A program made the position numbers and the translations under genes. A DNA stretch of 64,000 bases, taken from positions 159,403 through 223,402 of the IMG/VR virus record IMGVR_UViG_3300007513_000004, one strand, 5' to 3'. This document shows, one piece after another, positions 1-20,135 of this stretch. The notes below the pieces were generated by a model. The model was not told the DNA's origin. It was given only the letters and a program-made list of their open reading frames with translations, and did no database searches. Every line of letters begins with the position of its first letter. Within the stretch, counting starts at the first letter, position 1.

Positions 1-1056
1 GCGAATATCTTCCAGACCCTTAACGAGTCTTAATGCATATTCAATGTTCTTTTCCGGAGAAAGCCTGGCGACCATCCCAAATGCCGTTTCTCCTCTAATT
101 CCCAACTCTTTTCTTAACTCTCTGTTTTCTCTTCTTATAAAAACACTGGTATCAATTCCAACTGGCATTAAGATCTTATTTTTATCTAAAACACCAACAA
201 TATCCTTCGTCAATTCTTCGCTTACTTTGAAAATATTATCAACACCTGATCTGCTTCTTGTGTTTGCAACAGCATCACCCCAAATAAAATCACTATGGTA
301 TATCTCAACAACTTTTGCTGTTATTTTCTTGCTTTCTTTTAACTTCGAAATAACATCATATATCTTTTTGCTATTATAAAAAATAACTGTATCATAATTA
401 TGAGATATAAGAGTTGCTGATAAACGATCTAATGTTCTAATGAGCTTATGCTTTATATTTGGATTTGATAATTCAAATTCTAATTTATTTTTTGATAAAT
501 ACAAAAAATCTATATGAAACATATCTTTAGTTTTAGAGAAAATATTTTTAATATAGACTTCTCCGCCGCCATATATGCCATAGGGTATAATAACTGCAAT
601 TTTCTTATTAAAAGATATATTTTGCATATAAAGCTCCATCTGCCTAACTTCGTCCAACCGTTTCTCTTTTGGTTTTTTTATTATAGGCTTAATAATTCTA
701 TCATCACTTACGACAACTCTTCCCAATTCTATTCTTCCAAATGAATTTTTTGATCTTGATATTTCAATTATACAATTATCAATATTTTCTTTACATTCAA
801 AAGAATATTCGGACCAAGAACTTTTTGTAAACTTTATTTCTTTTTGAAAAAATATCTCTCCACTTTTCTTTTTAATATATAACTTTAATATCCCATTTCC
901 TGAAATCTTTTTACCAATTATTTTTATTTTTGCATTTTTAAAACTTAAAATATCTGTAGACAAACTTGACTTTGCAGACATTACAATGTTTTTATCTACA
1001 AAGCTAACTCCAGAAGACTTCCATTTAATATTATTATATGAATCTAATATTTTCAT
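1..1056 (-). CDS. GT-B glycosyltransferase (GT4-like), truncated at the left window edge; absent from the ORF track
   Basis: Manual translation: ATG at 1056 overlaps the upstream TGA (ATGA) and the frame stays open to base 1. It gives MKILDSYNN...KKIAVIIPYGIYGGGEVYIKN...VEIYHSD...MPVGIDTSVF...FGMVARLSPEKNIEY, i.e. the GGxE start motif, the xGID motif and the ARLxxEKN start of the second Rossmann domain typical of GT4. About 150 aa of extra N-terminal sequence precedes the GT domain. Confidence 0.85.
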   Translation of the reverse strand, partial: MKILDSYNNIKWKSSGVSFVDKNIVMSAKSSLSTDILSFKNAKIKIIGKKISGNGILKLYIKKKSGEIFFQKEIKFTKSSWSEYSFECKENIDNCIIEISRSKNSFGRIELGRVVVSDDRIIKPIIKKPKEKRLDEVRQMELYMQNISFNKKIAVIIPYGIYGGGEVYIKNIFSKTKDMFHIDFLYLSKNKLEFELSNPNIKHKLIRTLDRLSATLISHNYDTVIFYNSKKIYDVISKLKESKKITAKVVEIYHSDFIWGDAVANTRSRSGVDNIFKVSEELTKDIVGVLDKNKILMPVGIDTSVFIRRENRELRKELGIRGETAFGMVARLSPEKNIEYALRLVKGLEDIR

Positions 1057-2138
1057 AAAATATCCAAGATCTGTTTGGCCGCCCTCTCCCAGGTAAACAG
1101 CTTCACTGTTTTGTTAGACTCCTTTTTTAAACTCTTCTTTATATCTTTATAGTTCTCATATGCTTTTGTCATGGTTTCAGACAATGCATCTATATCTGGA
1201 ATATAAGTTTTGGCCCCAGGAGATGGTCTCCAATATTGATATTTGTCTGTGGCATCAATTTCTTTTACATCAACTAATAATGAATTTTTATCATTTAAAA
1301 AATCTAACTGACCAGTACACCTTGGCGCTATAACGATCATGCCTGCGGCCAAACCCTCCAGCAATGGTAGTCCAAACCCTTCAGAAGAAGAGGCGCTAAC
1401 AAGACATTCGCAAGAATTATATAACGGAACCATGCTTTCGTATCGATGCTGAACAACCTCCACCTGAGGCAGCCTTCTGCCTTTATGCTTTTTCTGTATT
1501 TTAAGAATTTCTTTAACAACATCACATTCAAACCTATATTTTGGCTCATTCAACTTTACTTTCAGCAAAAGACATACATCATCATCGTCTGTAAATGCAC
1601 TATAATATGCATCAACAAGCAAATCTATATTCTTTCTATAATGAGGTATAGAGACGTTTAAAAACTTAAATTTTCTCTTTGTCTTAAGATTATCAACTTT
1701 TGCTTTATTCTTAAAATCCTGAGGATTAATACCATGAGGTACAACTATACATTTTTCTTCTGGCCATCCGGCATTTACAAAAATCTCTTTTGAAAAATTA
1801 CTGGAAGGTAAAGCATAATCTACATGTTGAATTTCTTTTGACCAAACTTTTGGCAAAATACTTGTTTCATAATTGTAAATTGCTAATTTTAATTTAGAAT
1901 TTTTATTAAATCTATATTTAAAATTTCTAGGCAATGTATAAGTGAGATCAATATCCGCATTTATACCCTCCCTGCAAAGCTCCATCCAATCTTTTGGAAA
2001 CAAATTATATTTATTTGTACTATTTAAAAACAAATCATGGCCCATTAAGTGAAATTCTCTTAATAAGCTGCGCATAGTGACCGCCCAACTATGGGAAGTG
2101 CCAAGCATCGATTCTGCTCTAATTCTTAATGTGTCCAT
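1053..2138 (-). CDS. GT4 family glycosyltransferase
   Basis: Contains VVPHGIN, RKNIDLLVDAY and the EX7E motif EGFGLPLLEGLAAGMIVIA. Start moved from the track's 2222 to ATG 2138 (MDTLRIR...) because 2222 overlaps the upstream gene. Confidence 0.9.
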   Translation of the reverse strand: MDTLRIRAESMLGTSHSWAVTMRSLLREFHLMGHDLFLNSTNKYNLFPKDWMELCREGINADIDLTYTLPRNFKYRFNKNSKLKLAIYNYETSILPKVWSKEIQHVDYALPSSNFSKEIFVNAGWPEEKCIVVPHGINPQDFKNKAKVDNLKTKRKFKFLNVSIPHYRKNIDLLVDAYYSAFTDDDDVCLLLKVKLNEPKYRFECDVVKEILKIQKKHKGRRLPQVEVVQHRYESMVPLYNSCECLVSASSSEGFGLPLLEGLAAGMIVIAPRCTGQLDFLNDKNSLLVDVKEIDATDKYQYWRPSPGAKTYIPDIDALSETMTKAYENYKDIKKSLKKESNKTVKLFTWERAAKQILDIL

Positions 2139-2147
2139 GGTATGAGA

Positions 2148-2156
2148 ATTATACCA
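2148..2156 (-). promoter_or_regulatory. Putative extended -10 promoter (TGGTATAAT) for the glycosyltransferase pair
   Basis: Exact TGnTATAAT in the 43-nt gap upstream of ATG 2138. No -35 consensus and no Shine-Dalgarno. Confidence 0.5.
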
Positions 2157-2181
2157 AATAATGCTTTGTTTTTTTATAAAA

Positions 2182-5100
2182 CTATGGCAAATGGAAGTAG
2201 CATGGGAACGGTCCTTCGACAAAGGTTCCGGTTGCTGTACTGCCCGCTATGAAGAAGCACAGATCATCATCTTCAAAGTCTGTTTCTTCAACACACACTC
2301 CTATGCCTATTCTGCTGAGATCCTTTACACCAACCATTATATCTTCATTTCTGAATCCAGATTTCTTAAGGTGTACTCCAAATTGCAAAACCGTTCTATT
2401 TGAATCATTCAATGTATCATATAATATATTTTTGGTTTGCAATGTAGCAATTCCGGTTGTTGCGTCCAAACTGACACCAACCTTGAATATAACCCCGGTT
2501 GTTACCTCTTCATATTCTATCTCAAAAGACATCTCTGGAGATATAGACATAGCAGTCTCCGCAGAGCCGCTAGGTTCTATAATTAAAGCTTTATAAAAAC
2601 CAGGCAGATGTCCAGCTTGTGATAAAAAGTACAATGCCAAGGTAGTGATGTCAACATCTATGGTGCCGCCAGAGACTAACTCTCCAGGCTGAAAAGTAAC
2701 AACGAAAGAATCATTGTCTTCTAACGGATAATCTATTACCGTACCTAAGTTGTCTGCATTTAATATGTTATATGGAATTATATTATAATCCTCTGCACCG
2801 TCTGCAGCCGAAACAGACTCTGTCGTAGTTATAGATAATGTTGCCCCTATAACATTAGTCCTCTGTGTTAACATCAGAGGGAAGGCGACAGTGGCTCTGT
2901 TTATCAAAGAGTCAGAGTCTCTACTTATATCTATAGATGCCTCTTCCAAGTCTGACGAAGAAGAATATCCGTGTCTCATAACCAAACTATGCAATGTGCC
3001 GGTGAACTGAACTGGATAAGTTGGATATGCATATTGTGCAAGCTCAAAAGATACGCTGGCATCTCCGGCTCCGGGCTGAACGTCTGGAGTTTCTCCTATT
3101 CTTATAAACTGACCTGTTATATTGTCTGTTGAATCTATCAAAGTATCATCATAATACATTGCAAAAACAGCCTCATCAATTCTTCTTAATCTAAATATTA
3201 TTTCATCATTTAAATCATCCGCAGCATCTATAGAAAAGTCGAAATCACTTACAACATCGCCATCGGCATCGCCAAGCGTTATAACTCCATTATAAAACAT
3301 CTCTGTAGCACCACTTCCCGACAATCTCCATCCGAACTTAAGGACGGATGTTGTTTCGGCATTGGTAATAGTTATTGTCGTAAAAAATGCAATCTTTCCA
3401 TGGACAAGAGTACTGTCATCCCAAACTGTTCGCGACATTACAAAATCAATAATAAAATCACCCGATAATTCGCTGTCGATTATAGTTGGGACCGAAGGAT
3501 AATCTAGTTTTGCATATCTCTCATCAGCATTAATTGTCGATAATACAAAAACCGCTGGCTCATTTGGTCCAGAAAGTGCAGTTACAAAGGCGTCTGACGA
3601 TGGACTGTCAGAGGCATCTTGCCACTGATTAAAACCATTATCATCAGGATATGTAAAGTCTGTAAAAGACTCTGATATAACCTCTTCAGAGTCAGCGGCC
3701 TCTGTTTCGTCGGCATATCCGTCTACAGCATATCCGTCTACAAAGGCATCTACGTAAAGGCTGGAAATACACTGACTAAACTTTATTCTGCCTTTTGTCA
3801 AATCAGTTTCTGAACCAGAATCTTCGCACCCAACATATGTTCCGTCCGAAAACTTCATAGCAGGATATCCCGATTCTGTTTCGCAGGTTCCAGATTCAGC
3901 TTTTATAAAATTTGTATATAAATCAATTTGGCAGTCATCAACAGTCCCTGGAGGAAGCGGAATAGTTATCGTAGAAAACTCTATATCTCCATGATATGGA
4001 ACTCCAGGTTCCTTGTATATTTCGCCATTCGGTATAAACAAATCATTTGCCAAAACCTTTTGGTTTTTATAGATAGGAGCGCAATCGCCCTCCTCCATAC
4101 AGACTTCCTCGTCACAAACACATGATTCTTCATACTCTTCTGTAAAGTTTGTTTCCGAATATCTTCTTAGATCACATATATCAAGAAAGGTATCATCATG
4201 CGGTGCTCCAATATATGTTATTGACCAATTTTTTTCTTCAAATGGTACATTTAAAAGCTTCATATTATCGGAATAGGTATTTACCCTGGTCCCGCTTACA
4301 ATAACAACGTCCCCTAAATCACTAGAGCCAACAAAGGCTACTGCCTCTCCGTCTGTATCTGTAACGGACAACTCCACACTTACTCCGTCTGTATCTACTG
4401 TCTTGGAATATATAACATATGTGCCAGCAGACGATCCGGAAGATATTGTTATCTGATCCCCAACCCTCAGGGACAAAGCTTCATTTTCCGTCTCTACCGC
4501 AAAACTAACAGTGTCCTCTCCATCGGCTGTGGCCGGAGTGCTTAAAACGCCCCAATCGGAAAATTCTGCAGAATCAAATAGCGTTGGAAAGTCATCTTCT
4601 TCTAAAACATTTTCCAACTTTAATCTTAATACATTAAATGATTCATCTAAGGTGAAATTTACATATCCATCTATTGCATCTTCTATAAGCTCTATATCAG
4701 AACCATCTACCGTATCATCTTCGTTCAAATCAGCCTGAATAAATGTAACCAAGTCAAGCTCTCCGCCTAGAATCTTGCGCTCTGTGGTTTCTGTGTTTAT
4801 TGTGTTACCAACCACATTGAGTAACTCCATTATATCATTAGAAGTTAACTCTTTATCATTATCTAAGTCTCCAGCATACATTTTGTCGCATATGACACTA
4901 ACAATTCTATATCTAGAATTACATTCGCAATCTAAATCTGGAATAATAACTCTATTTATTAGATTTGAAGTTAACAGCTCAGAACTTGGCTCTATAAATA
5001 CGATTTCATCATTGCCAATATAACCCGGCTTGTCGAAAACTCCCGTTATATCCTGTGCTTCTCTTACATTTTTATCCTTTACTCTGGCCAATAAAACGGG

Positions 5101-6783
5101 TGGATAATCTTCATCGACCTCTGCCCACTCGTCTGCAGTCATTACTGCTACAGATGGAGCATCTTGAATTCTTGTATTAACAAAGTTTCCAGTTCTAGGG
5201 TGTGTTGCGGGAGTCTCAAAGTTATCTTGCCGCTGCAATACAAGCAGGTTTTCAGTTCCTTCCGAAACGTCACTCAATGATATATTTCTCAAAAAATAAG
5301 ACACTTCGGTACTTCCAACGTAATCAACAGTTTTTGGAAGAATTACTGGAAAACCATCTTCGGTATATGCTATACCGTCTGTAACCTCTACTGTGTCAGA
5401 GTGAACTGCAAACCAAAGTGACGAATCTGAATCATCGACATATACTAAATTATTTGGATCATATTCAAAAAATCTAGTTGTTTGCTTGTCAAAGCTTTCG
5501 AGGACGTTCAGCGTTTGACCATTATCAGTCTTTCTTGAGGGTCTGTCGTAACCTTTCTGCATCACAACCGTACCGGTCCTGTTGTCTCCCCGCCTGCTGA
5601 TAAGTACCGCATAATATTCATCAACATCTAATGATGGTTCAATATTTGGATCAGCGATTAGCGTGCCAGAGAAGTCAAAGCTTACAACCCGAGGTGTATC
5701 ATCAAGCTTGACCCCCAATGCTGCAAGATCTGCTTGAGAATATGACATCTCAATAATAGGAGAAGGGTCAGGGTCAAAGTCTATCAAGTTGTCAGGGGCT
5801 GGATCAGTTATGCAACTTATATCGGTTGATAACTTGTGAATTGAAATAACTATATCGCCTGAAAAATCATACTCAAGCCCAGAACTTGCATCCTCATCTT
5901 CCGAAACAGAAAGTAGTAAATCAATTTTTTGAATATTATTTGCTTTTGCTAAAAACTTCTGTCCATAAGTAGTGGTTTGGTCTCCATCTACTTCAAAATA
6001 AATCTCCTCTTCCGACTCTAATTCGAAATACAAATCATTAAAATTATATATAGAACCAAGACCTGTTTTTATTTCATCCTCAATAGACAAATCTGCACTA
6101 GAGGTTATAAAGTTTGCAAGATCCATATTTGGAGAATCTGTTTGAAAGGCAGTCTTCGTTCTCGCAAAGACCTTAAAGGGCTCTGCCTCTCTAAAAACAA
6201 TTTTTCCACTATCAGAAAGAGTATTTAAGCTTTCCTTTTCTAAACTATGCTCTGTCTTTCCGGTTCCTCCGGAAAAATTATTAAAAAGTACCGCTATAAC
6301 GCGTGTATAGTAATGCTCTGTAATCTTTGATATATTTTGCTTAAAGCTTATAACCTCTGAAACAAGTTCTCCAGAGTCGCTCAGGCTGCTGTATACAGTT
6401 CCAAGGATCAAAACCTTAGCTTCGATTCTACCACCAACATCAAGGCCAGAGGCCTCGACCTCTATTCTGTTTCCATAAATAATATCACTGGGCTGCCTAT
6501 CTAAATAGATAGCCCTTCCATCATACTCGCCGGAATCTATAACAAATTCTGATTCATTCTCATCATCACTGCTGTCCAAATTACCCGCAGGATCGCTCGT
6601 ATCTAATAAAACACGGCTTTCAAACAAGCGATCTCTTATGATTCCGCTTCCATGAAAATCCTTTGTTAAATTAGAAACTAAACCCCTATGGTGAATTTGT
6701 TCAGCATCTAAATCAGCCTCTGTTATTCTTTGGCCGTCAAAGAAATTTACTCTGGGAAGTTTTTCTCTATTAGCCTTTGCCAT
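2182..6783 (-). CDS. Large baseplate-associated fibre/structural protein (1533 aa) with an internal dockerin/EF-hand-like loop pair
   Basis: N-terminus PRVNFFDGQRITEADLDAEQIHH resembles the RxNFFxGQxLTxxDLxxEQ anchor of contractile-system fibre proteins. Lies directly after the wedge gene, is acidic and beta-rich, and has SD-like AGGAG upstream. Confidence 0.6.
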   Translation of the reverse strand: MAKANREKLPRVNFFDGQRITEADLDAEQIHHRGLVSNLTKDFHGSGIIRDRLFESRVLLDTSDPAGNLDSSDDENESEFVIDSGEYDGRAIYLDRQPSDIIYGNRIEVEASGLDVGGRIEAKVLILGTVYSSLSDSGELVSEVISFKQNISKITEHYYTRVIAVLFNNFSGGTGKTEHSLEKESLNTLSDSGKIVFREAEPFKVFARTKTAFQTDSPNMDLANFITSSADLSIEDEIKTGLGSIYNFNDLYFELESEEEIYFEVDGDQTTTYGQKFLAKANNIQKIDLLLSVSEDEDASSGLEYDFSGDIVISIHKLSTDISCITDPAPDNLIDFDPDPSPIIEMSYSQADLAALGVKLDDTPRVVSFDFSGTLIADPNIEPSLDVDEYYAVLISRRGDNRTGTVVMQKGYDRPSRKTDNGQTLNVLESFDKQTTRFFEYDPNNLVYVDDSDSSLWFAVHSDTVEVTDGIAYTEDGFPVILPKTVDYVGSTEVSYFLRNISLSDVSEGTENLLVLQRQDNFETPATHPRTGNFVNTRIQDAPSVAVMTADEWAEVDEDYPPVLLARVKDKNVREAQDITGVFDKPGYIGNDEIVFIEPSSELLTSNLINRVIIPDLDCECNSRYRIVSVICDKMYAGDLDNDKELTSNDIMELLNVVGNTINTETTERKILGGELDLVTFIQADLNEDDTVDGSDIELIEDAIDGYVNFTLDESFNVLRLKLENVLEEDDFPTLFDSAEFSDWGVLSTPATADGEDTVSFAVETENEALSLRVGDQITISSGSSAGTYVIYSKTVDTDGVSVELSVTDTDGEAVAFVGSSDLGDVVIVSGTRVNTYSDNMKLLNVPFEEKNWSITYIGAPHDDTFLDICDLRRYSETNFTEEYEESCVCDEEVCMEEGDCAPIYKNQKVLANDLFIPNGEIYKEPGVPYHGDIEFSTITIPLPPGTVDDCQIDLYTNFIKAESGTCETESGYPAMKFSDGTYVGCEDSGSETDLTKGRIKFSQCISSLYVDAFVDGYAVDGYADETEAADSEEVISESFTDFTYPDDNGFNQWQDASDSPSSDAFVTALSGPNEPAVFVLSTINADERYAKLDYPSVPTIIDSELSGDFIIDFVMSRTVWDDSTLVHGKIAFFTTITITNAETTSVLKFGWRLSGSGATEMFYNGVITLGDADGDVVSDFDFSIDAADDLNDEIIFRLRRIDEAVFAMYYDDTLIDSTDNITGQFIRIGETPDVQPGAGDASVSFELAQYAYPTYPVQFTGTLHSLVMRHGYSSSSDLEEASIDISRDSDSLINRATVAFPLMLTQRTNVIGATLSITTTESVSAADGAEDYNIIPYNILNADNLGTVIDYPLEDNDSFVVTFQPGELVSGGTIDVDITTLALYFLSQAGHLPGFYKALIIEPSGSAETAMSISPEMSFEIEYEEVTTGVIFKVGVSLDATTGIATLQTKNILYDTLNDSNRTVLQFGVHLKKSGFRNEDIMVGVKDLSRIGIGVCVEETDFEDDDLCFFIAGSTATGTFVEGPFPCYFHLP
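3713..3742. repeat. 15-bp tandem duplication (gcatatccgtctaca x2) encoding VDGYA VDGYA
   Basis: Read directly from the sequence. Confidence 0.9.
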
Positions 6784-6840: not shown

Positions 6841-9800
6841 TTAGCATGGTTCTCTTGGGAATTTTATCAATGCATTCGAATGTGCAGGCTTTAATCTATC
6901 GACAAGTTCGACTATCAAATCCTCAACTTCATCACTGTTAATCTTACCAAAATTATCCGCTACTTCTATATCAAAATTAAAGATACCTTTTGAGGGGTCA
7001 ACAACCGTTGCATAAAAGTCCTCTTCACTTTCTTGTTCAAAATTCAACATAAGAGTTGTTGCATCGTCTTTAACCACAGGCATGACGGTATCTGTATTAG
7101 ATGAATAATTTGGATCAATATAATCTCCTGCAGGATCTTTAAATGTGCTTCTCATCGTTCTGCTAAATCTTATATTATCCATTCTAGATAATGCCGACTT
7201 TCTTTCAAAAGCATCAGACCCAACGCATACTAGTCTAAAATCATCTCCAAGCTTTATATTATAATCTATTTGTCTAGAGGCACCTTCTTGTTGTGTGGTT
7301 TGCCCATAAACAAACCCTGTACCATATATTACGCCTTCTTGACCATATGTTATGAACCCACTTTCAACCCCATCTACAAACAGCCTCATCGTATCTGATG
7401 CCGAATTTGTCCTATATGTACACATGACTCTATGCCAAGTGTTTCTATTCCAATCTATATCTTTACATATTATATTTGTACTACCATTTGCAATTATTGA
7501 GAAAACAATCTGACTTCTCTCGTTTTTATAAACAGACACCCTGTCTCCGGATAAGCTGCGCGGAATATACGAAACAAGCACATCAACCTTCGATCCTGGC
7601 AAAGCATCTGTCAAAAAGAGTCTTTTTCCGTCTGCGGAAAGCTTGCTTCCTATCGAAAAGTCCTTTTCAATTCCCGTCCCGCCTGTAAGCCGACCTGTTG
7701 TTTCGCTTCTATAGATTTCATCAAATAATATTTTATCTATTTCATCCTGAGAATAAAACTCTGAAAATTCTTGAGAATCTTGCAAAAGCTGCACACTAAC
7801 AACTTCCTTTGCCGGAGTTGGCAAATCAATTATCGTTGGAGAAAAAGATGTAACTCGCTTTCTGGTTACCGAATAAATATCAACATAATATCTTTCAACC
7901 TCATCTCCGATTGTATCTAAGACTGGACTTATCCAAAACTCAATCGTTCCTTCTTTTCTTCTAAAATAAGAAAGCCTATTATTTATAACTAAAGGCTGTG
8001 TATTAAAGAATCTTGCTGATAATCCAAAATTATCATTAACGCTGTTTTCGCTAACCAACATATCATCGCTTCTAATCAGCTTCGTCTCATTAAATAGCGG
8101 CCCATCTTGTGCATAATGACATTCAATATAAGCCTCTATAGCCGTATCTTTATCAAAGCCCATACGAACCATTGTTGATACAAACATATCTTCATCATTA
8201 ATATACTTTAAAAGCTTCTCTCTGTCTTCCAAATCAAGTTTAAATTTAAAATTACTCTCTGTATTTAAAAACTCTTTTTGCCTTAATCTTCTTGACTGAA
8301 GAGCTATTGGGTCATCAAAATGAATCAATGCAAGAGTCTGATCGTCTGGACAGTGTGGATTCGGATTCAGAAAATCCTCTGTAACACTTCTCGTTCCATC
8401 TGTATCACTTTGTGTAGGCCGTGTATCGCTAGACATCTCCGTTATGATTCTAAACTCATCTATGGTTCCGCCAAATTGGCCCGCTTCATTCCTATCACAC
8501 CCTATATAAAGATGATCCCCAACCTTTGGTAGTTTTATATTTAAAAATGCAGGATAATTCAGATAATAATCACCAGGATGTAATTCAAACGGATAAAACC
8601 CATTGGATCCAGCTGCAGTCAAAATAAGGCTTCCATTTGAATATTCAAATACCTCTGCATATTCTCCGCCATTATCTGAAACTGTAATTGGATTCGTCTC
8701 AATAAGCTCTACAACATACGGCTCATAATCTGGATCTGCCAAATAAATCTCTCCAACCATTTTTGATACAGATTTAAATAACTTCTTACCCTTTATTGTT
8801 CCGTTTCCTCTTATGGAAAAGACCTCCTCATCCGTTCCGTCTATAGTCTCTCCATATACTGTAATCTTATTTGTATAGATATCATCCATGTAACCTTCGG
8901 GATATCCTTCTATATCTTTTTCGCAAAAAGCTGTATTGTCTGAATCAAATTTGATCGATAAATATCTGCCCAAATTTTTCTTATAAACCTGAACTGGTTG
9001 ACAAATAAGCAGATGATGACCATCATCACCCTCTAGGTCTATTTCAAAAATTGACCGATGCAAAAAGTCTTCCTCCTCCACAATGCTGTCTAAAGTAGGA
9101 ATTGTTCGCGGCAAAACAATCCTTCTTACCGTAACATCTTCCAACGATACTGGCTCTGCAGCGTGGGCCAAAATAACACTCTTACCGCTCTTTACATCAT
9201 ACGGCTTCTCATCAAGCCTATAATATGAAGAACTAGATAAACTTATTATATCATTACAATTTGCATAAACCAAACCAAAGGTTTCTATGTGAATATTTAG
9301 ATCAGAAAAATCAATCGTACTATTAAAGTTGCAATCAGCATCCTTTCCGACAAACTCTACCACCTTTGTGGCTATATTAACCCTATATTGTGGATTTATA
9401 ACATTTTCACCGCTCACAATACTTATTGATCCACCATCTACGGTGTATAATATCCCGCCCAACTCTGTTTCGTTACCTTCGCAATCTGTTCTAAATATTG
9501 CAAAAGAACTATTTCTAAAATCGGTCGCTATATCTTCTTTGATTCCTGCGGTTGGGGGAAACATAAACTTTATATCAGAAGCAGAAGCGTCAAACGTAAC
9601 CGTATCCAAGCTTAACCCGCTAACAAAAGTGACATCATCCCCGTCAACGCTGTTTATAATAAACTCCTGACCAACATATGATGCGGCCACAGTTGACTCC
9701 AGGAAGATTATAGACCTTCCTACCATCTCTTGAGAGAAGCCGGCCTTACTTGACGTAAAAGAAGATGAATCAGCCAAAATTGTTCCATCTGTAAAAATAT

Positions 9801-12800
9801 CACAAAACTCTATATTATCAACAAGGAAGTCTTGAAGCATTTCTTTGCTAACATCTGAAAATTTATCATTTATCCTAACCGGGACTGGTCCGCCAAACTT
9901 ATAAATATTTGGAGCTTCAAGGCCATCTACGAATAAATGCATTTCATCTTTTTCATAAAGAGTATTTAGCCTCCAACTTGCAGATATATGATGAAGATCT
10001 CCTGGCTCAAAGTCTTTTATGTTTGTCGCAATATTATACATATTCACATCACCTCTTGAAGTCTGTGAATTATCATAAATTCTGAAATTCATAAATCCTT
10101 TGCCATCTTTAAATATTGATATTCTATTTTCAGAATCACTTTCGCCGCTATCAAACAAGTATCTTAATTTATCCGATGTAAAATAAACTTCGTCTACATC
10201 ATATTCTGATTCTGATGCATATCCATAAGCATCAGCATATCCATCTTCATCACAATCCATATACCCATCGGCATAAGCATCAGCATATCCATCTGCCTCT
10301 CCAATTACGGATAAAGAAAATTCAATTTTAGAATCAGTACTTATAAAGATATCTCCATCCTCTAAAGTTGTAACCCCATCTTCGTGTCGTCCACTAAACT
10401 CTATAAGGCCTATATCTATAAGGTTTCCAGAGTAATTATCATGAAAATTATTTGCATCAACCAAGGATCCATCAAGCAGGTGTATTCCCAAGAAAGGCTC
10501 ATTTAATATTTCGCATTCATCTATATCTTTTGATGAAAAATCATCAAAAGTAAGCCTGCTCAAGACAAATGTATCAGATTCTATTGTTATTATCTCGTTT
10601 TCATAATCTTTTGACAGAATAAGACTATCAAACAATCCTACATCCCAATTCATATAGGCTATATCCACTATATCGTTGGTATGGCCGTCTAGAACCAAAA
10701 CCAGCGGCTGCCCTGCATCACTTATTGCTAACGCAACCTTTATATTTAAAGCATCATCATAAACATGTATTGGAACAATACCCGTCATAACTCCAGATAC
10801 CGCCCCTTCAAATCTATCCGATGAAGAGGTTAAAATATCATAATCTAATTCTGACACCTTAAACGAAACCGTTACAGAATAATCTCCACCATGACATGGG
10901 AGTCTTGTGTATACAAAGTTACCATCTGATTCGGCATGATTACAGCTTTCCACATCATAAACTGATGGCCCCATCCGATAGACTCCGCCACTCTGAATAG
11001 TATCAAAGCCTCCATGCTTCATCCAGAGAGATGACTCAGTTTCTGTGCCTCCAAGCAATATGTTTATTAAATCCGAACTTGTTTCGTCAAGCTTTCTCCA
11101 CCCGCGCCCTGGCTCTTTTCCGTCCAAAACTCCATCGCCGCAATATCTATACTCCGCAGAGCAAACAAGGCCCGTTGGGCATCCCGACCCATCCTCATTC
11201 CTGTGCGCTCTTACTACAGATGAAAATTCACCATCTGTATTTATAGTTCCTGAAAAAGTATGATCTATTGGAACATCCGAATAGACAAACTCATAATCTC
11301 CGCCCGAGCCTCCGGACGCCTCGCAAACCCCTATTGGAACATTTACCGAGTTTCCAGCCCTGGTCCTAAAGACCCATTGACCAGCGTCTTCTGCTAGCGG
11401 AGATAAGCACAATTCGTCAAACCCTATAAAAACACCCTCTGAAGAATCTGAGTTGTACGGCAATCCAACCGACGTATCCGGGAAATCATACTTGTTTACC
11501 TCAAACGGTACACCTTTAGGGCTTCTTGCTGCAGCGCCAATATAAATATCATTTTCATTAAACCTATTATATATTGAATACTTCAACCTTCCTATATCCA
11601 CTATAGACTTTGCAGACCTATCTAGCGTTCCTGCTGCAATCTTGCCTGATAAAGCACTAGAATTATGAACAGAGCTTATGCCATCAGCTGTATTAAACCA
11701 TTTGTCAATATTAAAGGCTTCATAAATAACATCCTCTTTATCAACCCCGATAAGATCAGTATAAAATAGCTTTATAGTCTTTTTCTTAGGCCCAACAGCG
11801 CTATTTACAACAATCTCTACCAAATTATTCAAAGGATCCCTTGTAAACTTTAGATCAACAAAATCTGACATCCAATCTAATATGTAGCTTTTTGCTTCAT
11901 ATCCTAAATACTTTGTAGATTCTGGATTAGCATTTGTAAGAATGGATGCAGTCTGATAAAGCACTGTTATTTCGCCAGTTGGCAGCAGTGTATTTATTGC
12001 GGCCGAACCTTGTGCTGTCACATATTGTTGATTATCTGGAATTCTATTTATTATGAATCCAGACACAGAATCTGGAATTCTGCCTTCTACTGTATTTCCA
12101 TCTTCATCTAGAAACGCATATACTTCATATATCGCACCGCGAGTATCTAAAATTCTAAAAGCAGATGGACGATCATCAAACGCGACATCTACATCGCTTA
12201 TATATGAAAATGGTATACTAAAGTCTAAATCAATCGTAATAGACTGGAAATTCTTATCTCTAAATTTAGACAGCTCCTCAAGAGTGTCGTTGACTTTGCA
12301 GCTACAATTTCTTGTAGTATGCAGCCTATCATAAGTTGGTATTTCATTACTCTCTATATGCTCATACCCAACTCTAAATGTATATATTCTTCCACTTTCC
12401 GGATTGCATAATGGTCTTAATGAAAACAGCATAAACAGCAATTTATTCGTATCTCCCATAGATATAAACGCTGGGCTGCTAAACCTAAGAAGGTCTAATT
12501 CGCTACCCTCTGCCAAGAGGCCTCTAGAGGAGTCAGACATGGATCTTCCGAGTCCAAGGATACCCAAGGATGCCTTATTAAACGCAATGTCCTCAGAGGG
12601 CTTTCTGCGTGGAGGGTTTATTACTTCTGGGGCAGAAAAATTAGACACCTTTAATGATATGTCCATCTCTGTTTTTACAATCCTACTGATAGAATCTTCT
12701 TGTTTGACCAAGACAAAAGCACCAATGCTTTCTTCCTCTTCCCCTCCTCGCTCATCAACCCAAGAGCTTGTATAGTTATGCAGAGTTATGCTTGGAAGCG

Positions 12801-15800
12801 AATTGTCCACCCCTCCTATGACATGATCTGAAGCCAAAACCCCAAAATTATTATCATAATTAAATGGATTGGTTCCAAGTTTGTAAACATAATTTTTGGT
12901 ACCAATATTGTCTATATCTATAGTTAAAGTTGCATCATTATCAATTCCGGCCCACTCCGGGCAAATCCATGCCGAAAGCGTTCCTTCGCTCAAATTAATA
13001 TTCGAAAGAGAAGGGGTCTGTATAACGATATCGTCATTTATCATAACCCCCTCATTAAACTTGCAGGATTTAAACTCCAAAATTCCATCTGCACTCAATG
13101 TTCCGGGGTGTAAATAATCTCTGCCCAAAATCCAGCTTCCAAATACAGACTCTGTAATCTCAGGGGTTATGTCTGTAAAAGATTTTATCAAAGACTTAAA
13201 AGAAGGTGTGGTTGGCCCGTTTGTAAAGGCTTGCATCGTTCCCGCTAAAGCATTTCTATAAAGCTCTCTATCTGCAGTTATTGGAAATCTTTGAAAAAAC
13301 GGAATCTTAGTTAATATTCCAAAATTTTTCTTCAAAGCATCTCTCAATGCTCCAAATTTGTATGTAACAAAATATGTTTCACCCTCTGATATTGCACTTC
13401 CTATGGACCAATCTACTTCATTATCTCCATACTCATATGAAATATAGATATCGTCATATGAATATACATAGCCAAGGAAAAGCCTGCCAGCCCTGAAGTC
13501 AACACCAACTTCGGTTCCTATCTTCGGAACAAAGGTGGTCTTGTATATAACCTCAACTGGATCACCAGAATTAACATATGAGTCGGCCGGAATAGTGATT
13601 GTGATTCCAGAATCAGCTTTGTCCGTCTGAGCCTTAACGATAACCTGGGCGCTGCCCAAGTCTGGCGAATCTGCCTCAACATTATTCTCTGCTGGAACAG
13701 AAACTGTTATATTGGATAATTCTGCATCAAAACCTGTTATCGCAAATCGACTGCCTCCTTCGTCTAGTAAGAAATCTCCATCAAAATCTATGTCGTCCAG
13801 AATGGGGCCTGACTTTATTTCTACAACAACTTCATCGCCCGATTCTTCTGCAAAAACTATCTCTAAATCATCTATTTTAACAACATTTAATTTATCATTA
13901 AAAATTTCAGAACCTGTTGGCGTATGTATTATTTTATAAATTTCGTCAAATTCAGAATCATTTATTGTAATCAAATAATCATCACCACTACTAAGTAACC
14001 TTGTGCTATAACTCTTTTTTAAGTCTATAACATTATCTTCAAAAGACATAAATGTAGTATCAAAGATATTTCCGCCACCGTCTTTTACGAGCTCCTTTAC
14101 AACGTCTGACCCCAAGTCTTCAAGCCTACTAGCCTCTGCTTCGTAGGTTAACCTTGACCCCTCTAAGAGCCCCGTTGAGTACACCCCGTTTACCTCAGAG
14201 ACTTTCATGGGCAAGACCACTGTAAAGTCATCCAAAACAACACAAACATCTTGAAGGTTTCCATTAAAATCTATGGCCGTAGTTTCTCCGTCCGGAAGCA
14301 AAACAGTATTTTCTAAATCAAGTAAAGAAATAGTGCTGCTAGTATTTGATGGCTCATCATAAATTTTTGTAGCATCTTCCAAAGTATCTGAAGAAACTAA
14401 CTTCTTCGAAGCCTCTACAATACTTATTATATTGGTATTGAAAGGCGTAATTGAATTATAATTATAGTTAATATAACCTAATTCATAATCTTGATCATAA
14501 GATGTTGCCAAATAAACCTGGCCATGCCTATAGTCTACACAGTAATCTCCAACTTTGCGCAAACGAGATAGGTTTTCAAAAAAGCCTTCTCCTTTTGACG
14601 ATAATATTTCAGAAGTCAAACTATCATCCGAAGCTCTGCTCACTCCTGGGTTTGAATTAATATCCCCAAAGTACTTCTCTCTTGCAAAAAGATCTGTTTT
14701 TGTAAATTCAATTGATGTATTTATATACGATCCAATTGCATCTCCTGAGCCATTTATAATATAATTATTATCCAAGCTAAAGGCCAACCCCTTTGGACCT
14801 ATAGTTACATCTTCATTCAAACTTGGCGCTGTAGCTGTAGAGTTTATAGACACTGAGCTGATCAGGTTGTCAGAATCTGGCGTTCCAAAAAACTTAATTT
14901 GTAAATCTTCAATATCATCAGAGCCGTCTAACCCCGTACTTCTTATGAAATAATCTTGAGAATTTTGATCAATTAATTCAGCAGGAATTCCCGGTGAGAA
15001 TTGAATACTGCTATTAGACGCATTTGCTGTTATGGTTATAGAAAATGTTGGACAAACAAATTCTCCAATTGGCTCTAATCTTTCCAACTCTATTAAATCA
15101 AACTTTGCTAACTCATTCTCTTCTGTCCTGAACTCTGGAGAACGAGAGCCTGTAAAGTAAATCTCATCCCTTGTATTATATAGAGGCAGATAAACCTCTC
15201 CAGTTGTTTGGTTAAAAACTCTAAATACATTTGTTACTGGCGTATTTTGTGGACTTATGATAAATGAAGATACAAAATTATTTTCTACATGCTCGTTAAA
15301 TACCTCTGTATGGCAAGGAGCTCTGTAATCAACATCCTCGACATAGACCTTATCGTAATTAAAGTCTATATTTACACCTTCTCCAACTAAGCTTCTGTTG
15401 CTTGCGGCAACAAACTCATTATCTTTTATATAAAAATCTAGATTTCTAGAAAATGAATTTCTATATAAATATTCTGCAACATTATTATTAGACCCAGTGC
15501 CATCCCCGATCTCTTCGGCTCCGACCACTATAACCTCTCCTGTTGCATAATTTACTGCAAACTCACCAACTCTAGAAGGTAACTTTGAAGCATTGAAAAC
15601 AAGCTCTAACTGAAACTCATCTGGAATTTCTGATAAATTCTCTCCTGCCTTAAAAGCTATACCGCCCGTCTCTGGTATTTCATTTTCATAATTTACTATT
15701 GGAGCGTTTTCTAAGAAAAATCTTGTAATATTGGTAGGAATAGACTCTGTTTCGGCTTCTTTAAGATTATATACTTCTATTGAATTTTCATTAACGTCTA

Positions 15801-16808: not shown

Positions 16809-19800
16809 CTAATTAATTCTAAATTTGTTTCTAGATACAGCCTCAAAAACAATAGTGCCAGGAGATATAGTTTGATTATCTAGCGCTCTAATAAAAGCCT
16901 TCCTTCCTGTTTTATCAGACTCATTAAATAATGAAATATTAACTGAGTCAACACCATTTTCTGCAGCAACAACGGCAATTATATCAGAATAATCAACAAC
17001 CGTTCCAAGTTTTGATGTGTTTAAAAGGTTTGAAACAGAATTTGTAGCATTTTCAACAATTTTTCCAGCCTCTCCAAGAGCGTTATCATTTATCAAAATT
17101 GTTCCTTCAACGTCTATTGTCAATTCCTCTGCCTCTTTAATAAGAATGTCTGCAGTGACAGGCCTAACCCTCTCAATCTCTATAGTAGAGCTTGTTATTA
17201 GCTTATTAACATTATATGATATTGAAATTCTCTCACCTTCTTTTGGAGCCAAAAAATCATAATCAACATAATATGTATTTCCATTTCCAGGCTGACTTAT
17301 CGGATTAACCTCAATGCTTCCCACCAAGTTTCCTGCAATAGATCTAAATCCAGATGATACAGATATCATGTCTATACGGCCAAATTGATTATCGGTAATT
17401 CTATGTCCAGAATCCGTAAAATATAATTCTTCATAAGCTTCGCTATTGTATACCAAAATAACTACCCTTACTACGTCTGAAGAGCTTAGCGAAATAGAGT
17501 TATTATTAGATGTTGACGGCAATGTAACCTCGTAATTTTCCAAATCTGAGTCTACCTGACCTGTGCCAATATCATATGTTATATCGTTTAGATAATATCC
17601 TAGCAAGTCAAACTCTTCATCCATCTCTCCGTCCGAATCCAACGTATATACGTGATCAACCCTTGCTATGCCTACATTGCCGGGTATAGAAGTAAGGCCC
17701 AAAGCTGTTTTTAACTCAGACTCTATATCTAAAGTTAACCCGCTCATAGATACTCCGGCCGCAATATCTATTTCGTACCTATTCATGGTTACCCCAGAAA
17801 TCTTTACCTTTCCTGGTTTTGAAATTCCAGATATTCCAACATCAATTTTTGTTGGGCCAAATCTGGCTATAGAAACTTCATCAGAACTTGTATCATAATT
17901 GAAAAATATAGGCTGATTTGTGCCAGAAGTCTCTGCCTGCCCCAGTCCTGATAATTCGTTTGAAGCTCCGCCACCCGTTATTGGAAGGTTTCCCAGGGTG
18001 GTTTTTGGATAAATAGAGTTTATATCTGCAACATAACTTACATAAATTGAATCACCAGATAAATACAGATCTTCTACTGTATCTAAAACCTCTTCTGTAT
18101 CTAAAATACTATCTGAAGGCAATGTTATTATATTGTTATAAAATGACCCATCGGTTCTGTCTACATCAAACACCTCTACTTTGTTATAGTGTATAATAAT
18201 CTCATCGTCTATCGCTCCTGGAGAATCTGATGGAAGATAAATAATTCTTGCAACAAATGATCCATCTGCCTCCTTTGTATTATAAAGCTCTAGACCATCA
18301 CTTTCTCTTCTTATTGATATTACATTTTCTATAGCGTCCTCTTCAGAGTCGATCTCTATCCCTACAACATCTGTAACCCCTACTGTATCAACTACGCTTA
18401 TAGATCCTGATAATTCTATTTTCTGATAAGCAGAAATAACCTTATTAATATTATATCCAAGCTCTACCTCATAAACCAATTCATCATCTGACTTGGTTAT
18501 GACAGACTCTTCTTCAAAGATGCCCCCCGATGGAGTCCAGTCTATAGAGTCTGATGCAGATGGATCTTGAAACTGCGAAAGACTATCTGATCCACCATAG
18601 TCAACATATTTATCATAAACTTGTCTCCATGTATAATTTACACTTAAAACATCCGCAGGAGTTGGAAGGGATCGTCCAGAAATCTCTATAACGCCCTCAT
18701 TATTTAGCCCGTCTGAGTCTAAATTTTGATCAACTACAGAATATAGCTCTCCAGTTGTTTTGTTTTGAACCTTGCTAACTCTAACGGCAGGGGTGTGCAT
18801 TAATCGTACAAACTCTTTTCCTGCAGAACTAACTTCTGAATTTTCTCCGACCTCATTTATATCCCTATACACTTGTATTATATTATCTATATCTGTAAAG
18901 GAAAGAGGGTCAATACTAAAGGATCCAGCCTTAGTGATTCCTTCTCCTGATACAATCTTTGTATTAGATACAAAGTGAATTTTATCAAACCCAAAAGGAC
19001 TTCCTCCAGTTTCTGGATTTAAATCTTTTTCTAATTCAAAATTTCCATGAGTTATTCCATCACTATCAACGAATGCCTCTACCAGTGTCCCAGAAGAGCT
19101 ACCGACTACCGATATTATAGAGTCAATCGGCTGAGCAGGCAATGTTCCGTTTTTAAAAGCTAAGACCCTCCTCTCTTCAGAGGTTCTCGTTGGATCCTGT
19201 CCTGTTTGGCCAAGTATATGATCATTTCTTTCATCAATAATATTTCCAGAGCCAGATAGGTCTGTAAAAATAAATGATTCAGAAATTGCCTCTACTTTTC
19301 TTCCTAGGATATAGGCATCTACTTTGCCTCCAGTTCCAGAGCTTATGATTCTGTCCGTCCCATCCCCTGTCTCTAGAGTTTCGGTTCCATCTCTCAGCAT
19401 CAATGTATCACCGGGCTCTACTATTAGAGCATCTAAAACCCCATTGACGCCCAAGAGGGAGTTTCTATATCCTGCCGAAGTTCCTACATTTGCTCCGCTA
19501 AAAACTGCTAAGATTCTAGACCTAAAAGAATCATCCGTTTCTCTATTTGTTCCACCAGTCATTGATGTTAGATTTGTAACAGATACGGCAAATGGAAGAT
19601 TGGTTGAAACAATCTGAAGAGACGCAACATTGCCTCCGGTTCCTTGCCTAACCGCTTGTACGGGAACTTCTAAAACATACGAACTATTAAGTCCGGCTAT
19701 TCTTAATCCCTTTTTCATCCTACTGGCATTGGCTGCCAATCTATTCTTATCTGTTGCAGACATTACAAAATTACCGATTGTTCTAAACTTTATTCCGTTT

Positions 19801-20135
19801 CTTGCAGTTACAAGAGTACCGGTTGGTATCGATATGTCTCCAACCAATGTATTTGTACAAAATATAACAATCCCATTAGCTGCCGAGCCGGTGTTTCTTC
19901 CTGCTCCAAAATTTGCAGCAAGCCTTTCCAGGTCTCTTCCGGAAGTTGTTGCCAAAGACTGCTTCTCTGCAACAACACCTACTGCTGAATATAATTTTGC
20001 AATCTGATCTGCTGGCAAGTCTACAAACAAATCTCTAGAAACAGTTCCAGGCTTTGTATCAAGATTTGGCTGAGTAAAGCCTAACCTCTGTATCATCGTA
20101 GACACAATTTCACTAAAAGATCTAAACGTAGCCAT
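16809..20135 (-). CDS. Baseplate J-like wedge protein (P2 gpJ / Mu gp47 / T4 gp6 family) with large internal insertion
   Basis: Canonical motif GGTNRETDDSFRSRIL, preceded by an A.GxxGN.....I segment. Position after gp25-like gene. Confidence 0.9.
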   Translation of the reverse strand: MATFRSFSEIVSTMIQRLGFTQPNLDTKPGTVSRDLFVDLPADQIAKLYSAVGVVAEKQSLATTSGRDLERLAANFGAGRNTGSAANGIVIFCTNTLVGDISIPTGTLVTARNGIKFRTIGNFVMSATDKNRLAANASRMKKGLRIAGLNSSYVLEVPVQAVRQGTGGNVASLQIVSTNLPFAVSVTNLTSMTGGTNRETDDSFRSRILAVFSGANVGTSAGYRNSLLGVNGVLDALIVEPGDTLMLRDGTETLETGDGTDRIISSGTGGKVDAYILGRKVEAISESFIFTDLSGSGNIIDERNDHILGQTGQDPTRTSEERRVLAFKNGTLPAQPIDSIISVVGSSSGTLVEAFVDSDGITHGNFELEKDLNPETGGSPFGFDKIHFVSNTKIVSGEGITKAGSFSIDPLSFTDIDNIIQVYRDINEVGENSEVSSAGKEFVRLMHTPAVRVSKVQNKTTGELYSVVDQNLDSDGLNNEGVIEISGRSLPTPADVLSVNYTWRQVYDKYVDYGGSDSLSQFQDPSASDSIDWTPSGGIFEEESVITKSDDELVYEVELGYNINKVISAYQKIELSGSISVVDTVGVTDVVGIEIDSEEDAIENVISIRRESDGLELYNTKEADGSFVARIIYLPSDSPGAIDDEIIIHYNKVEVFDVDRTDGSFYNNIITLPSDSILDTEEVLDTVEDLYLSGDSIYVSYVADINSIYPKTTLGNLPITGGGASNELSGLGQAETSGTNQPIFFNYDTSSDEVSIARFGPTKIDVGISGISKPGKVKISGVTMNRYEIDIAAGVSMSGLTLDIESELKTALGLTSIPGNVGIARVDHVYTLDSDGEMDEEFDLLGYYLNDITYDIGTGQVDSDLENYEVTLPSTSNNNSISLSSSDVVRVVILVYNSEAYEELYFTDSGHRITDNQFGRIDMISVSSGFRSIAGNLVGSIEVNPISQPGNGNTYYVDYDFLAPKEGERISISYNVNKLITSSTIEIERVRPVTADILIKEAEELTIDVEGTILINDNALGEAGKIVENATNSVSNLLNTSKLGTVVDYSDIIAVVAAENGVDSVNISLFNESDKTGRKAFIRALDNQTISPGTIVFEAVSRNKFRIN

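What the first reader, a model, noticed from the sequence alone, without database searches (positions are those of the whole stretch)
4667..4875. Dockerin-like pair of Ca2+-binding loops inside a phage fibre/baseplate protein
Seen: GDLDNDKELTSNDIMELLNVV and ADLNEDDTVDGSDIELIEDAI both fit the 12-residue D-x-[DN]-x-D-x-x-[LV]-x-x-x-D loop plus amphipathic helix, 46 aa apart. Known: this duplicated loop-helix is the dockerin type I signature, which binds cohesins on cellulosomes and cell surfaces. Spacing here is longer than the usual roughly 30-36 aa. Inference: the virion may dock onto a cohesin-bearing host surface or use a dockerin-cohesin-like joint for modular assembly of tail parts.
Basis: partly seen in the sequence, partly recalled or inferred. 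Interest (0 to 1): 0.65.

Follow-up and report, generated by a model that had tools for sequence, protein, structure and literature searches.

The report
Dockerin-fold calcium module in phage tail protein
A conserved 1,533-residue tail-region protein of an uncultured marine jumbo phage carries a real dockerin-type calcium-binding module set inside a beta-hairpin, but no cohesin partner was found, so it is a new member of a known module family, not evidence that the phage docks on cohesins.

Summary
Both 12-residue Asp/Asn loops, each followed by a helix, lie at residues 638-658 and 684-704 of a 1,533-aa ORF (window 2182-6783, minus strand), 46 residues apart.

It is not chance:
- The segment aligns without indels in 120 orthologs, and the calcium-ligand positions are kept in 114-120 of them.
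- The window's copy is below the Pfam Dockerin_1 cut-off (14.6 vs 22.9 bits). Ten orthologous segments scanned singly all pass (29.7-33.7 bits), while EF-hand families stay below theirs.
- AlphaFold2 models are confident (pLDDT 88 and 91). Their best structural matches are solved dockerins (Z up to 8.8), including in an unbiased scan of 48,161 chains.

It differs from classical dockerins in three ways. It is internal, inserted between two long beta-strands. Its linker is 26 aa and forms two helices. Only the second helix is conserved.

The gene follows a Baseplate_J-like gene and a 3,319-aa gene in a myovirus tail module. No Pfam cohesin was found in this record or in five relatives, two of them 99-100% complete. 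The host is unknown.

Most likely it is a calcium-stabilised structural or contact knob with a conserved partner.

The parts
2182..6783 (-). Gene for P0001, a 1,533-aa acidic protein (10.6% Asp) that carries the module. It is the third gene of a conserved run: Baseplate_J-like, then a giant protein, then this gene.
   Evidence: ORF list and translation. 170 homologs of about 1,520 aa on contigs up to 420 kb. The same gene order is seen in a 49%-identical relative. No Pfam or PHROG family apart from a weak Dockerin_1 hit.
4666..4875 (-). Dockerin-fold module, residues 637-706: two calcium-binding loop-helix segments joined by a 26-aa linker.
   Evidence: Dockerin_1 14.6 bits, E=0.04 in this copy; 29.7-33.7 bits in 10 orthologs against a cut-off of 22.9. 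AlphaFold2 core pLDDT 94-97. Solved dockerins at Z 8.8, 8.4 and 8.1. Top matches in the unbiased scan map to residues 635-713.
4834..4869 (-). Loop 1, residues D639-D650. Position 6 is Lys here and Gly in 88 of 120 orthologs. The following helix (648-655) has variable exposed positions.
   Evidence: Column counts: D639 and D650 invariant, position 3 D/N in 119/120, position 5 D in 114/120. Positions 648, 649, 652 and 653 have entropy of about 3 bits.
4732..4791 (-). Extended linker, predicted as two helices (residues 665-672 and 678-684). It is itself well conserved: T661, T667, I671, G674, F681.
   Evidence: DSSP of the model; conservation.
4672..4731 (-). Loop 2, residues D685-D696, and the second long helix (694-704). 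This is the most conserved part of the module; both the hydrophobic and the acidic positions of the helix are nearly invariant.
   Evidence: D685, D693, D696, E701 and G706 are invariant. L686, N687, D689, G694, I697 and A703 are kept in at least 90% of 120 orthologs.
4876..4911 (-). Beta-strand before the module (residues 625-636), preceded by invariant Cys619, Cys621 and Cys632.
   Evidence: Strand at model residues 14-25 in one model and 156-167 in the other. Invariant Cys residues.
4609..4641 (-). Beta-strand after the module (residues 715-725).
   Evidence: Strand at model residues 104-114 in one model and 246-256 in the other.
4297..4584 (-). Next domain, residues 734-829: a small beta-barrel.
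   Evidence: Z 5-7 to beta-barrel domains of phage tail proteins (an Acinetobacter phage tailspike, T5 pb9, N4 tail) and of many unrelated proteins. This is a generic fold match.
6841..16800 (-). Upstream neighbour, 3,319 aa, with a Laminin_G_3 (ConA-like) domain near its C-terminus.
   Evidence: Pfam E=5.3e-11. A 3,218-aa counterpart sits in the same position in a relative.
16809..20135 (-). Baseplate_J-like wedge protein, 1,108 aa.
   Evidence: Pfam Baseplate_J E=1e-21; PHROG 6, baseplate wedge subunit, E=8e-44.
43686..46928 (-). Tail sheath protein, 1,080 aa. It marks the region as a contractile-tail module.
   Evidence: PHROG 2839 and 279, tail sheath, E=2e-16 and 6e-13. Weak tblastn matches to sheath genes of cultured myoviruses.
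1053..2222 (-). Downstream GT4 glycosyltransferase.
   Evidence: Pfam Glycos_transf_1 E=3e-11; PHROG 2170 E=2e-37.

Best explanation
Residues 637-706 of P0001 form a genuine dockerin-fold module. It has two calcium-binding loop-helix segments packed against each other, and it is inserted between two long beta-strands of a conserved, roughly 1,520-aa protein. That protein is encoded at the distal end of the tail/baseplate gene block of an uncultured marine jumbo myovirus lineage.

Shown here: the sequence motif, its conservation, family-level Pfam membership and the predicted fold.

Inferred:
(a) Each loop binds one calcium ion. In seawater the module would therefore be loaded and rigid, and much less so inside the cell.
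(b) The module projects as a knob from the beta-sheet.
(c) Its nearly invariant second helix and linker make a conserved contact. The contact would be with another part of the same protein or with another virion protein, so the module acts as a calcium-stabilised structural or assembly joint and not as the variable host-recognition tip.

The variable face of the first helix is either free surface or a secondary, lineage-specific contact.
For: Motif and statistics.

Conservation: no indels in 120 orthologs, and ligand positions 1, 3, 5, 9 and 12 are kept in 114-120 of 120.

Family membership:
- 94 of 120 segments hit Dockerin_1 at E<=0.01, best 8.6e-10.
- 10 of 10 tested segments pass the gathering score over profile positions 1-54 of 57 as one stretch, while EF-hand families stay below theirs.
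- A profile of the family against solved-structure sequences has dockerins as its top six matches, best E=1.9e-4.

Fold:
- pLDDT 87.8 (core 94-97) and 91.3 with pTM 0.85.
- 33 of the re-aligned chains reach Z>=5, and every listed row is a dockerin-containing entry. Best is 8x39_A at Z 8.8, rmsd 2.2 A over 66 residues; 5lxv_B aligns 63 of its 65 residues.
- Dockerins are also the top seven of 48,161 chains in the unbiased scan.
- Eight of the ten nearest ESM Atlas clusters list Dockerin_1 among their Pfam families.

Setting: tail sheath, Baseplate_J, the 3,319-aa gene, then this gene. The same order is found in a 49%-identical relative.

Conserved-partner argument: residues 661-700 are among the best conserved of the protein, at 0.72-0.76 mean top-residue frequency. 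The helix after loop 2 is nearly invariant on all faces. The equivalent exposed positions after loop 1 have about 3 bits of entropy.
Against: - Calcium binding, oligomeric state and virion location were not tested and cannot be with these tools.
- No partner was identified.
- Model coordinates could not be inspected, so whether the conserved helix is buried against the neighbouring domains or exposed is unknown.
- The window's own copy scores below the Pfam cut-off and lacks the usual Gly at loop position 6 in both loops (Lys644, Asp690). Such variants are common in the family.
- The structural role of the protein rests on gene order only. PHROGs and Pfam give no tail-fibre or baseplate family for it, and a full-length profile finds no solved relative.
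Confidence: 0.6

Rival explanations
1. Host docking. The module binds a cohesin-type domain displayed on the host cell surface and so acts as the phage's adhesin or receptor-binding element.
For: - The fold and family are those of modules whose only well-characterised function is cohesin binding.
- The exposed positions of the first helix are highly variable among orthologs, as expected for a specificity surface.
- Non-cellulosomal cohesins and dockerins are widespread in bacteria and archaea (PMC9012536, citing Peer et al. 2009).
- A preprint reports a 406-kb brine-pool jumbo phage with a gene annotated as dockerin, linked by CRISPR spacers to Myxococcota (10.1101/2024.01.25.577265). Its relation to this family is unverified.
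Against: - The host is unknown, so no host cohesin could be sought.
- The module as a whole is among the more conserved parts of a protein that is evenly conserved over its length (45-72% identity across the listed orthologs). That is unlike typical receptor-binding tips.
- The conserved face (second helix) implies an equally conserved partner.
- The module is internal, not at a distal terminus.
Confidence: 0.1
2. Intra-virion cohesin-dockerin joint. The module plugs into a cohesin-like beta-sandwich of another tail protein that is too diverged for the Pfam model, and so joins tail parts modularly.
For: - The conserved second helix and linker suggest a conserved partner.
- The neighbouring genes encode very large, almost unannotated proteins with ample room for cryptic beta-sandwich domains. 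One has a ConA-like Laminin_G_3 domain.
- The gene order with the 3,319-aa neighbour is conserved.
Against: - No match to Pfam Cohesin, even at E<=1, in five related records, two of them 99-100% complete; none at the default cut-off in the window's own record.
- No candidate partner domain was identified, and no complex prediction was justified.
- The conserved contact could equally be intramolecular. A pTM of 0.85 for the 431-aa model indicates a fixed arrangement of the module with its neighbouring domains.
Confidence: 0.12
3. Calcium switch. The module senses external calcium and triggers a conformational change of the baseplate, as calcium does in the baseplate of lactococcal phage p2 (from my own knowledge), without a dedicated protein partner.
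For: Two complete calcium-binding loops are conserved in a baseplate-adjacent protein. Dockerins are known to fold on calcium binding (from my own knowledge).
Against: Seawater calcium is constantly high, so a switch would fire only once, at release from the cell. There is no evidence here for alternative conformations. All five models gave similar confidence.
Confidence: 0.1
4. Chance resemblance. The segment is two acidic loops in an Asp-rich protein with no dockerin fold.
For: P0001 is 10.6% Asp. A loose EF-loop pattern is not significantly enriched in it (observed 2, shuffled mean 0.66, P=0.14). The window's own copy is below the Pfam cut-off.
Against: The stricter pattern is significant (P=0.001). 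Conservation is complete across 120 orthologs. Orthologs pass the Pfam cut-off. The fold matches are consistent.
Confidence: 0.02

Closest known systems
Type I dockerin modules of cellulosomal enzymes (Pfam PF00404; for example PDB 1ohz, 2ccl, 4fl4, 4dh2, 5lxv, 8x39)
   Same: - Duplicated 12-residue calcium loop plus helix, with all ligand positions kept.
- The loop-bearing helices pack as in solved dockerins: Z 7-8.8, rmsd 2.1-2.8 A over 60-66 residues, covering nearly the whole target chains.
- Orthologs pass the Pfam gathering score.
   Different: - It is internal, inserted between two beta-strands, whereas classical dockerins are terminal appendages.
- The linker is 26 aa with two helices, making the loops 46 aa apart. 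A type I dockerin aligned needed a 10-residue gap in the linker.
- The two segments are asymmetric in conservation.
- The helix positions that are Lys-Arg in Clostridium thermocellum (from my own knowledge) are Glu-Asp here.
- No cohesin was found, and the context is a phage tail gene block, not a secreted glycoside hydrolase.
Non-cellulosomal dockerin-like modules (Peer et al. 2009, cited in PMC9012536; the Clostridium perfringens NagH/NagJ pair, PDB 2ozn)
   Same: A dockerin fold outside any cellulose-degrading system, with partner and role mostly unknown. 2ozn_B aligns at Z 7.1, rmsd 1.6-1.7 A over 53 residues.
   Different: Those with a known function still pair with a recognisable cohesin. 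None is recognisable in these phage genomes.
Dockerin-annotated proteins of other uncultured phages (BFVD entries named 'Dockerin type 1' from Siphoviridae and Myoviridae sp.; an ESM Atlas viral cluster with Dockerin_1 in 80% of members)
   Same: Phage-encoded proteins with the same module. Some orthologs of P0001 already carry a precomputed PF00404 hit in public tables.
   Different: Those are mostly shorter proteins (211-400 aa) or unrelated large ones, and none has been studied. No sequence match to cultured-phage records was found.
EF-hand pairs (calmodulin, troponin C)
   Same: The same 12-residue loop chemistry. Weak sub-threshold EF-hand hits occur in 5-21 of 120 orthologs.
   Different: EF-hand families never reach their gathering scores. 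EF-hand proteins do not appear among the significant fold matches, where the helix packing is that of dockerins.

Membership tests
Dockerin type I (Pfam PF00404) | Score at or above the curated Pfam gathering threshold (22.9 bits) | tested here: inconclusive
   The window's copy is not met: 14.6 bits, E=0.04 on the excised segment, and 8.7 bits on the whole protein. The orthologous family is met: 10 of 10 tested segments score 29.7-33.7 bits, and 94 of 120 match at E<=0.01. The segments align without indels at 43-78% identity to the window's copy, so membership by homology is the reasonable reading.
Dockerin type I (Pfam PF00404) | Two tandem segments, each a 12-residue calcium-binding loop with Asp/Asn at positions 1, 3, 5, 9 and 12, followed by a helix | tested here: met
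   Loops at 639-650 and 685-696. The positions are kept in 114-120 of 120 orthologs.
Dockerin type I (Pfam PF00404) | Dockerin three-dimensional packing of the two loop-helix segments | tested here: met
   Predicted models only. Z 8.8, 8.4 and 8.1 to 8x39_A, 5lxv_B and 4dh2_D. Dockerins are the top matches in an unbiased scan of 48,161 chains.
Dockerin type I (Pfam PF00404) | Short linker giving about 30-36 residues between loop starts | tested here: not met
   46 residues between loop starts. The linker is 26 aa and forms two helices, constant across all 120 orthologs.
Dockerin type I (Pfam PF00404) | Binds calcium, and folding depends on it | not testable with these tools
   Inferred only, from the conserved ligand positions.
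Cohesin-dockerin system | A cognate cohesin (PF00963) in the same genome or in the interacting organism | tested here: not met
   No match at the default E<=0.001 in the window's own 223-kb record (67% complete), and none at E<=1 in five related records, including ones rated 100% and 99% complete. The host genome is unknown and was not tested. Diverged cohesin-like folds are not excluded.
Phage tail fibre or baseplate protein | Homology to a known tail fibre or baseplate family, or presence in the virion | tested here: inconclusive
   No PHROG or Pfam structural family and no solved relative. The position directly after Baseplate_J and a giant gene in a sheath-containing module is conserved in relatives. 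There are generic beta-barrel matches to tail proteins.
EF-hand (PF00036, PF13499 and related) | Score at or above the gathering threshold, and helix-loop-helix pairing as in calmodulin | tested here: not met
   All EF-hand hits are below their cut-offs. No EF-hand protein is among the meaningful fold matches.

The most novel reading that the evidence does not exclude
The module is the working end of a phage cohesin-dockerin-type lock. Either the marine jumbo phage adsorbs by plugging a calcium-loaded dockerin into a cohesin-like protein on its (unknown) host's surface, or its oversized tail is assembled from giant proteins through dockerin joints with cryptic cohesin-like partners. Either would be the first functional cohesin-dockerin-type interaction shown in a virus particle.
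Probability: 0.15. Interest if true: 0.75.

Novelty: new member of a known kind. Interest (0 to 1): 0.4.

Why it matters
Dockerins are among the strongest modular protein connectors known, yet the function of the many copies outside cellulosomes is largely open. Here one is fixed, without length change, in a large and widespread family of marine jumbo-phage tail-region proteins: 170 homologs on contigs up to 420 kb. Its two faces are very unequally conserved.

That gives a concrete, expressible 70-125-residue fragment for two questions: what a dockerin does in a virion, and whether calcium, abundant in seawater and scarce in the cytoplasm, gates tail maturation.

As it stands this is an annotation-level result, not a surprise. 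Public tables already tag some orthologs and other phage proteins with Dockerin_1.

Tried and rejected
- PHROGs on P0001: no family.
- tblastn of P0001 and of the excised module against 50,697 phage records: no match.
- Full-length family profile against solved-structure sequences: only the dockerin stretch, weakly.
- ESM Atlas feature search on P0001: nothing usable.
- Cohesin (PF00963) search in the window's own record and in five related records: none.
- Scan of species-representative bacterial and archaeal genomes with the segment profile: only an ordinary dockerin in a Prevotellaceae genome bin, at 33% identity. It gave no prophage or host clue.
- Tail sheath against cultured phages: only 24-31% identity over part of the protein, to actinobacteriophage, Thermus phage and other sheaths. 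No usable lineage or host assignment.
- tRNA scan of the window: none.
- Literature: no paper in the held library describes a natural dockerin in a phage tail protein. The hits were a structural-modelling remark on a carbohydrate-binding module in an E. coli phage (PMC5967307) and a one-line mention of a dockerin gene in a 406-kb brine-pool jumbo phage (10.1101/2024.01.25.577265).
- Foldseek on the 431-aa model outside the dockerin: only poor matches, such as endosialidases at TM 0.11.

Not run:
- Complex prediction, because no specific partner could be nominated and neighbourhood alone is not reason enough.
- The exhaustive representative-protein search, because family scans had already settled the identity.
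- Laying of reads, which was not needed.
Full report
**Where it is.** The window is the last 64 kb of a 223-kb IMG/VR virus record rated 67% complete. The finding lies in a 4,602-base ORF on the minus strand (2182-6783) encoding a 1,533-aa protein, P0001, with 10.6% Asp.

**Is it more than chance?** Yes.
- In 5,000 shuffles of P0001 it occurs 0.044 times on average, with P(at least 2)=0.001.
- A word-based search found 170 homologs of about 1,520 aa, at 45-72% identity for the 120 listed, on contigs up to 420 kb.
- Across 120 of them the segment 615-730 aligns with no insertion or deletion.
- In both loops, positions 1, 3, 5, 9 and 12 hold a residue able to bind calcium in 114-120 of 120 sequences. 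D639, D650, D685, D693 and D696 are invariant.

**What family is it?**
- The window's own copy is sub-threshold for Pfam Dockerin_1: 14.6 bits and E=0.04 on the excised segment, against a cut-off of 22.9. Both loops have lost the usual Gly at position 6 (Lys644, Asp690). Such variants occur in 32 and 54 of the 120 orthologs.
- At family level the assignment is clear. 94 of 120 orthologous segments hit Dockerin_1 at E<=0.01, best 8.6e-10, against 21 or fewer for any EF-hand family.
- Ten segments scanned singly all pass the gathering score (29.7-33.7 bits). Each matches as one stretch covering profile positions 1-54 of 57. EF-hand hits stay below their cut-offs.
- A profile of the 120 segments searched against solved-structure sequences returns dockerins as its top six matches, best 2y3n_B at E=1.9e-4. 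Most of the remaining rows are also dockerins, with EF-hand proteins lower down.

**What fold is it?**
- AlphaFold2 on the 124-residue alignment gives mean pLDDT 87.8, with the core at 94-97. The order of elements is strand 625-636, loop 1, helix 648-655, helices 665-672 and 678-684, loop 2, helix 694-704, strand 715-725.
- Foldseek's first 25 or so matches are all dockerins, with TM by target 0.57-0.76.
- Re-alignment gives 33 chains at Z>=5, and every listed row is a dockerin-containing entry. Best is 8x39_A at Z 8.8, rmsd 2.2 A over 66 residues. 5lxv_B scores Z 8.4 and aligns 63 of its 65 residues.
- A second model of residues 470-900 has pLDDT 91.3 and pTM 0.85 and reproduces the module between the same two long strands.
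- In an unbiased comparison with 48,161 representative chains, the seven best matches are dockerins mapping to residues 635-713.
It is not met. The packing is dockerin-like.
- The long spacing is explained by a 26-aa linker that forms two helices.

**How it differs from classical dockerins.**
- It is internal, sitting as an insertion between two long beta-strands.
- The linker is about ten residues longer, and its length is constant in the family.
- The two halves are unequally conserved. After loop 1 only the hydrophobic helix positions are kept, and the exposed ones (648, 649, 652, 653) have about 3 bits of entropy. After loop 2 nearly every helix position is kept, acidic ones included, and E701 and G706 are invariant.
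- Residues 661-700 are among the best conserved stretches of the whole protein.

**Context.**
- All large genes of the window are on the minus strand.
- In the order of transcription they include a tail sheath (43686-46928) and a small virion structural protein (43038-43673).
- Several giant unannotated ORFs follow, then a Baseplate_J-like wedge protein (16809-20135) and a 3,319-aa protein with a Laminin_G_3 domain (6841-16800).
- Then come P0001 and a GT4 glycosyltransferase.
- The run of a 1,103-aa gene in the Baseplate_J position, the giant gene, the dockerin protein and then glycosyltransferases is the same in a 49%-identical relative on a 414-kb contig.
- P0001 itself matches no structural family. 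'Tail or baseplate-distal protein' is therefore an inference from gene order. Its even conservation along its whole length does not look like a typical fast-evolving receptor-binding tip.
- The domain after the module (734-829) is a generic small beta-barrel, also seen in phage tail proteins at Z 5-7.
- The gene is held nearly complete in marine or seawater metagenome runs from two studies, one of which may be the source of this DNA.
- No close cultured phage exists in the collection searched.

**The cohesin question.**
- Pfam Cohesin gives no match in the window's own record.
- It gives none, even at E<=1, in five related records. These include a 395-kb genome rated 100% complete and a 332-kb genome rated 99% complete.
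- The search's control genomes gave cohesin hits, so the search works.
- Diverged cohesin-like beta-sandwiches cannot be excluded by a sequence profile.
- The host is unknown. A scan of representative genomes gave no prophage copy and no host clue. The host-docking idea therefore could not be tested.
- A preprint mentions a dockerin gene in a 406-kb brine-pool jumbo phage linked by spacers to Myxococcota (10.1101/2024.01.25.577265). I could not verify that it belongs to this family.

**Most likely mechanism.** I take the module to be a calcium-loaded dockerin-fold knob. Its conserved second helix and linker would make a conserved contact, within the same protein or with another virion component, stiffening or joining part of the distal tail.
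- The fold and the ligand conservation are shown.
- Calcium binding, the location of the contact and the presence of the protein in the virion are inferred.
- The module would be loaded in seawater but hardly in the cytoplasm. That follows from general knowledge of calcium levels and of calcium-dependent dockerin folding, and is speculative here.
- Host-surface cohesin docking (0.10), a cryptic intra-virion cohesin joint (0.12) and a calcium-triggered switch (0.10) remain open. Chance resemblance is effectively excluded.

**Novelty.**
- Dockerin-like modules outside cellulosomes are well known (PMC9012536, citing Peer et al. 2009).
- Other uncultured-phage proteins are already named 'Dockerin type 1' in BFVD.
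- The nearest ESM Atlas cluster is viral, with Dockerin_1 in 80% of its members.
- Some orthologs of P0001 already carry a precomputed PF00404 tag.
- No paper in the held library treats a dockerin in a phage tail protein.
- This is therefore a new member of a known kind. Its somewhat unusual features are internal insertion, a two-helix linker and asymmetric conservation. It is of moderate interest.

**Not done.** No complex prediction was sent, because there was no defensible partner. The exhaustive representative search was not used, because the family scans had settled the identity.

Noticed in passing
L025:14868-24551 (relative on a 414-kb contig); window 1-2222: Directly downstream of the dockerin-bearing gene, a relative carries four glycosyltransferase genes plus NeuB (PF03102) and a CTP_transf_3 cytidylyltransferase (PF02348). 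This is a nonulosonic-acid and glycosylation cluster abutting the tail genes, which may suggest glycosylation of virion proteins. In the window only the first glycosyltransferase (1053-2222) and an unassigned ORF (1-1056) are visible.
   Followed up: partly
window 4888-4929 (residues 619-632) and about 3754-4176 (residues 870-1010): Three invariant cysteines (C619, C621, C632) sit just before the module. A Cys-rich stretch at residues 870-1010 includes the most conserved part of the protein, with up to 0.81 mean top-residue frequency. These may be disulfides or a metal site. No family match.
   Followed up: no
window 6841-58181, minus strand: Eight ORFs of more than 1,000 aa lie here: 3,319, 2,738, 1,970, 1,777, 1,207, 1,108 and 1,080 aa, plus P0001 itself. 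They have almost no Pfam or PHROG matches beyond Baseplate_J, Laminin_G_3 and tail sheath. This is an unusually oversized tail gene set.
   Followed up: partly
window 16809-20135: The Baseplate_J-like protein is 1,108 aa. Its C-terminal 85 or so residues also give weak hits to separate 'tail protein' and 'baseplate protein' PHROGs (1608, 4226), possibly a fusion of two wedge components.
   Followed up: no
window 20136-20665, 41979-42424, 58182-58912: These are gaps of 450-730 bases without an ORF of at least 150 aa in an otherwise tightly packed minus-strand gene block. They were not examined for small genes, promoters or RNAs.
   Followed up: no
window 7312-7548 (residues 3085-3163 of the 3,319-aa protein): A ConA-like Laminin_G_3 domain lies near the C-terminus of the giant upstream neighbour. 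It is the only recognisable beta-sandwich next to the dockerin gene, and it is conserved (faintly) in the relative's 3,218-aa counterpart.
   Followed up: no
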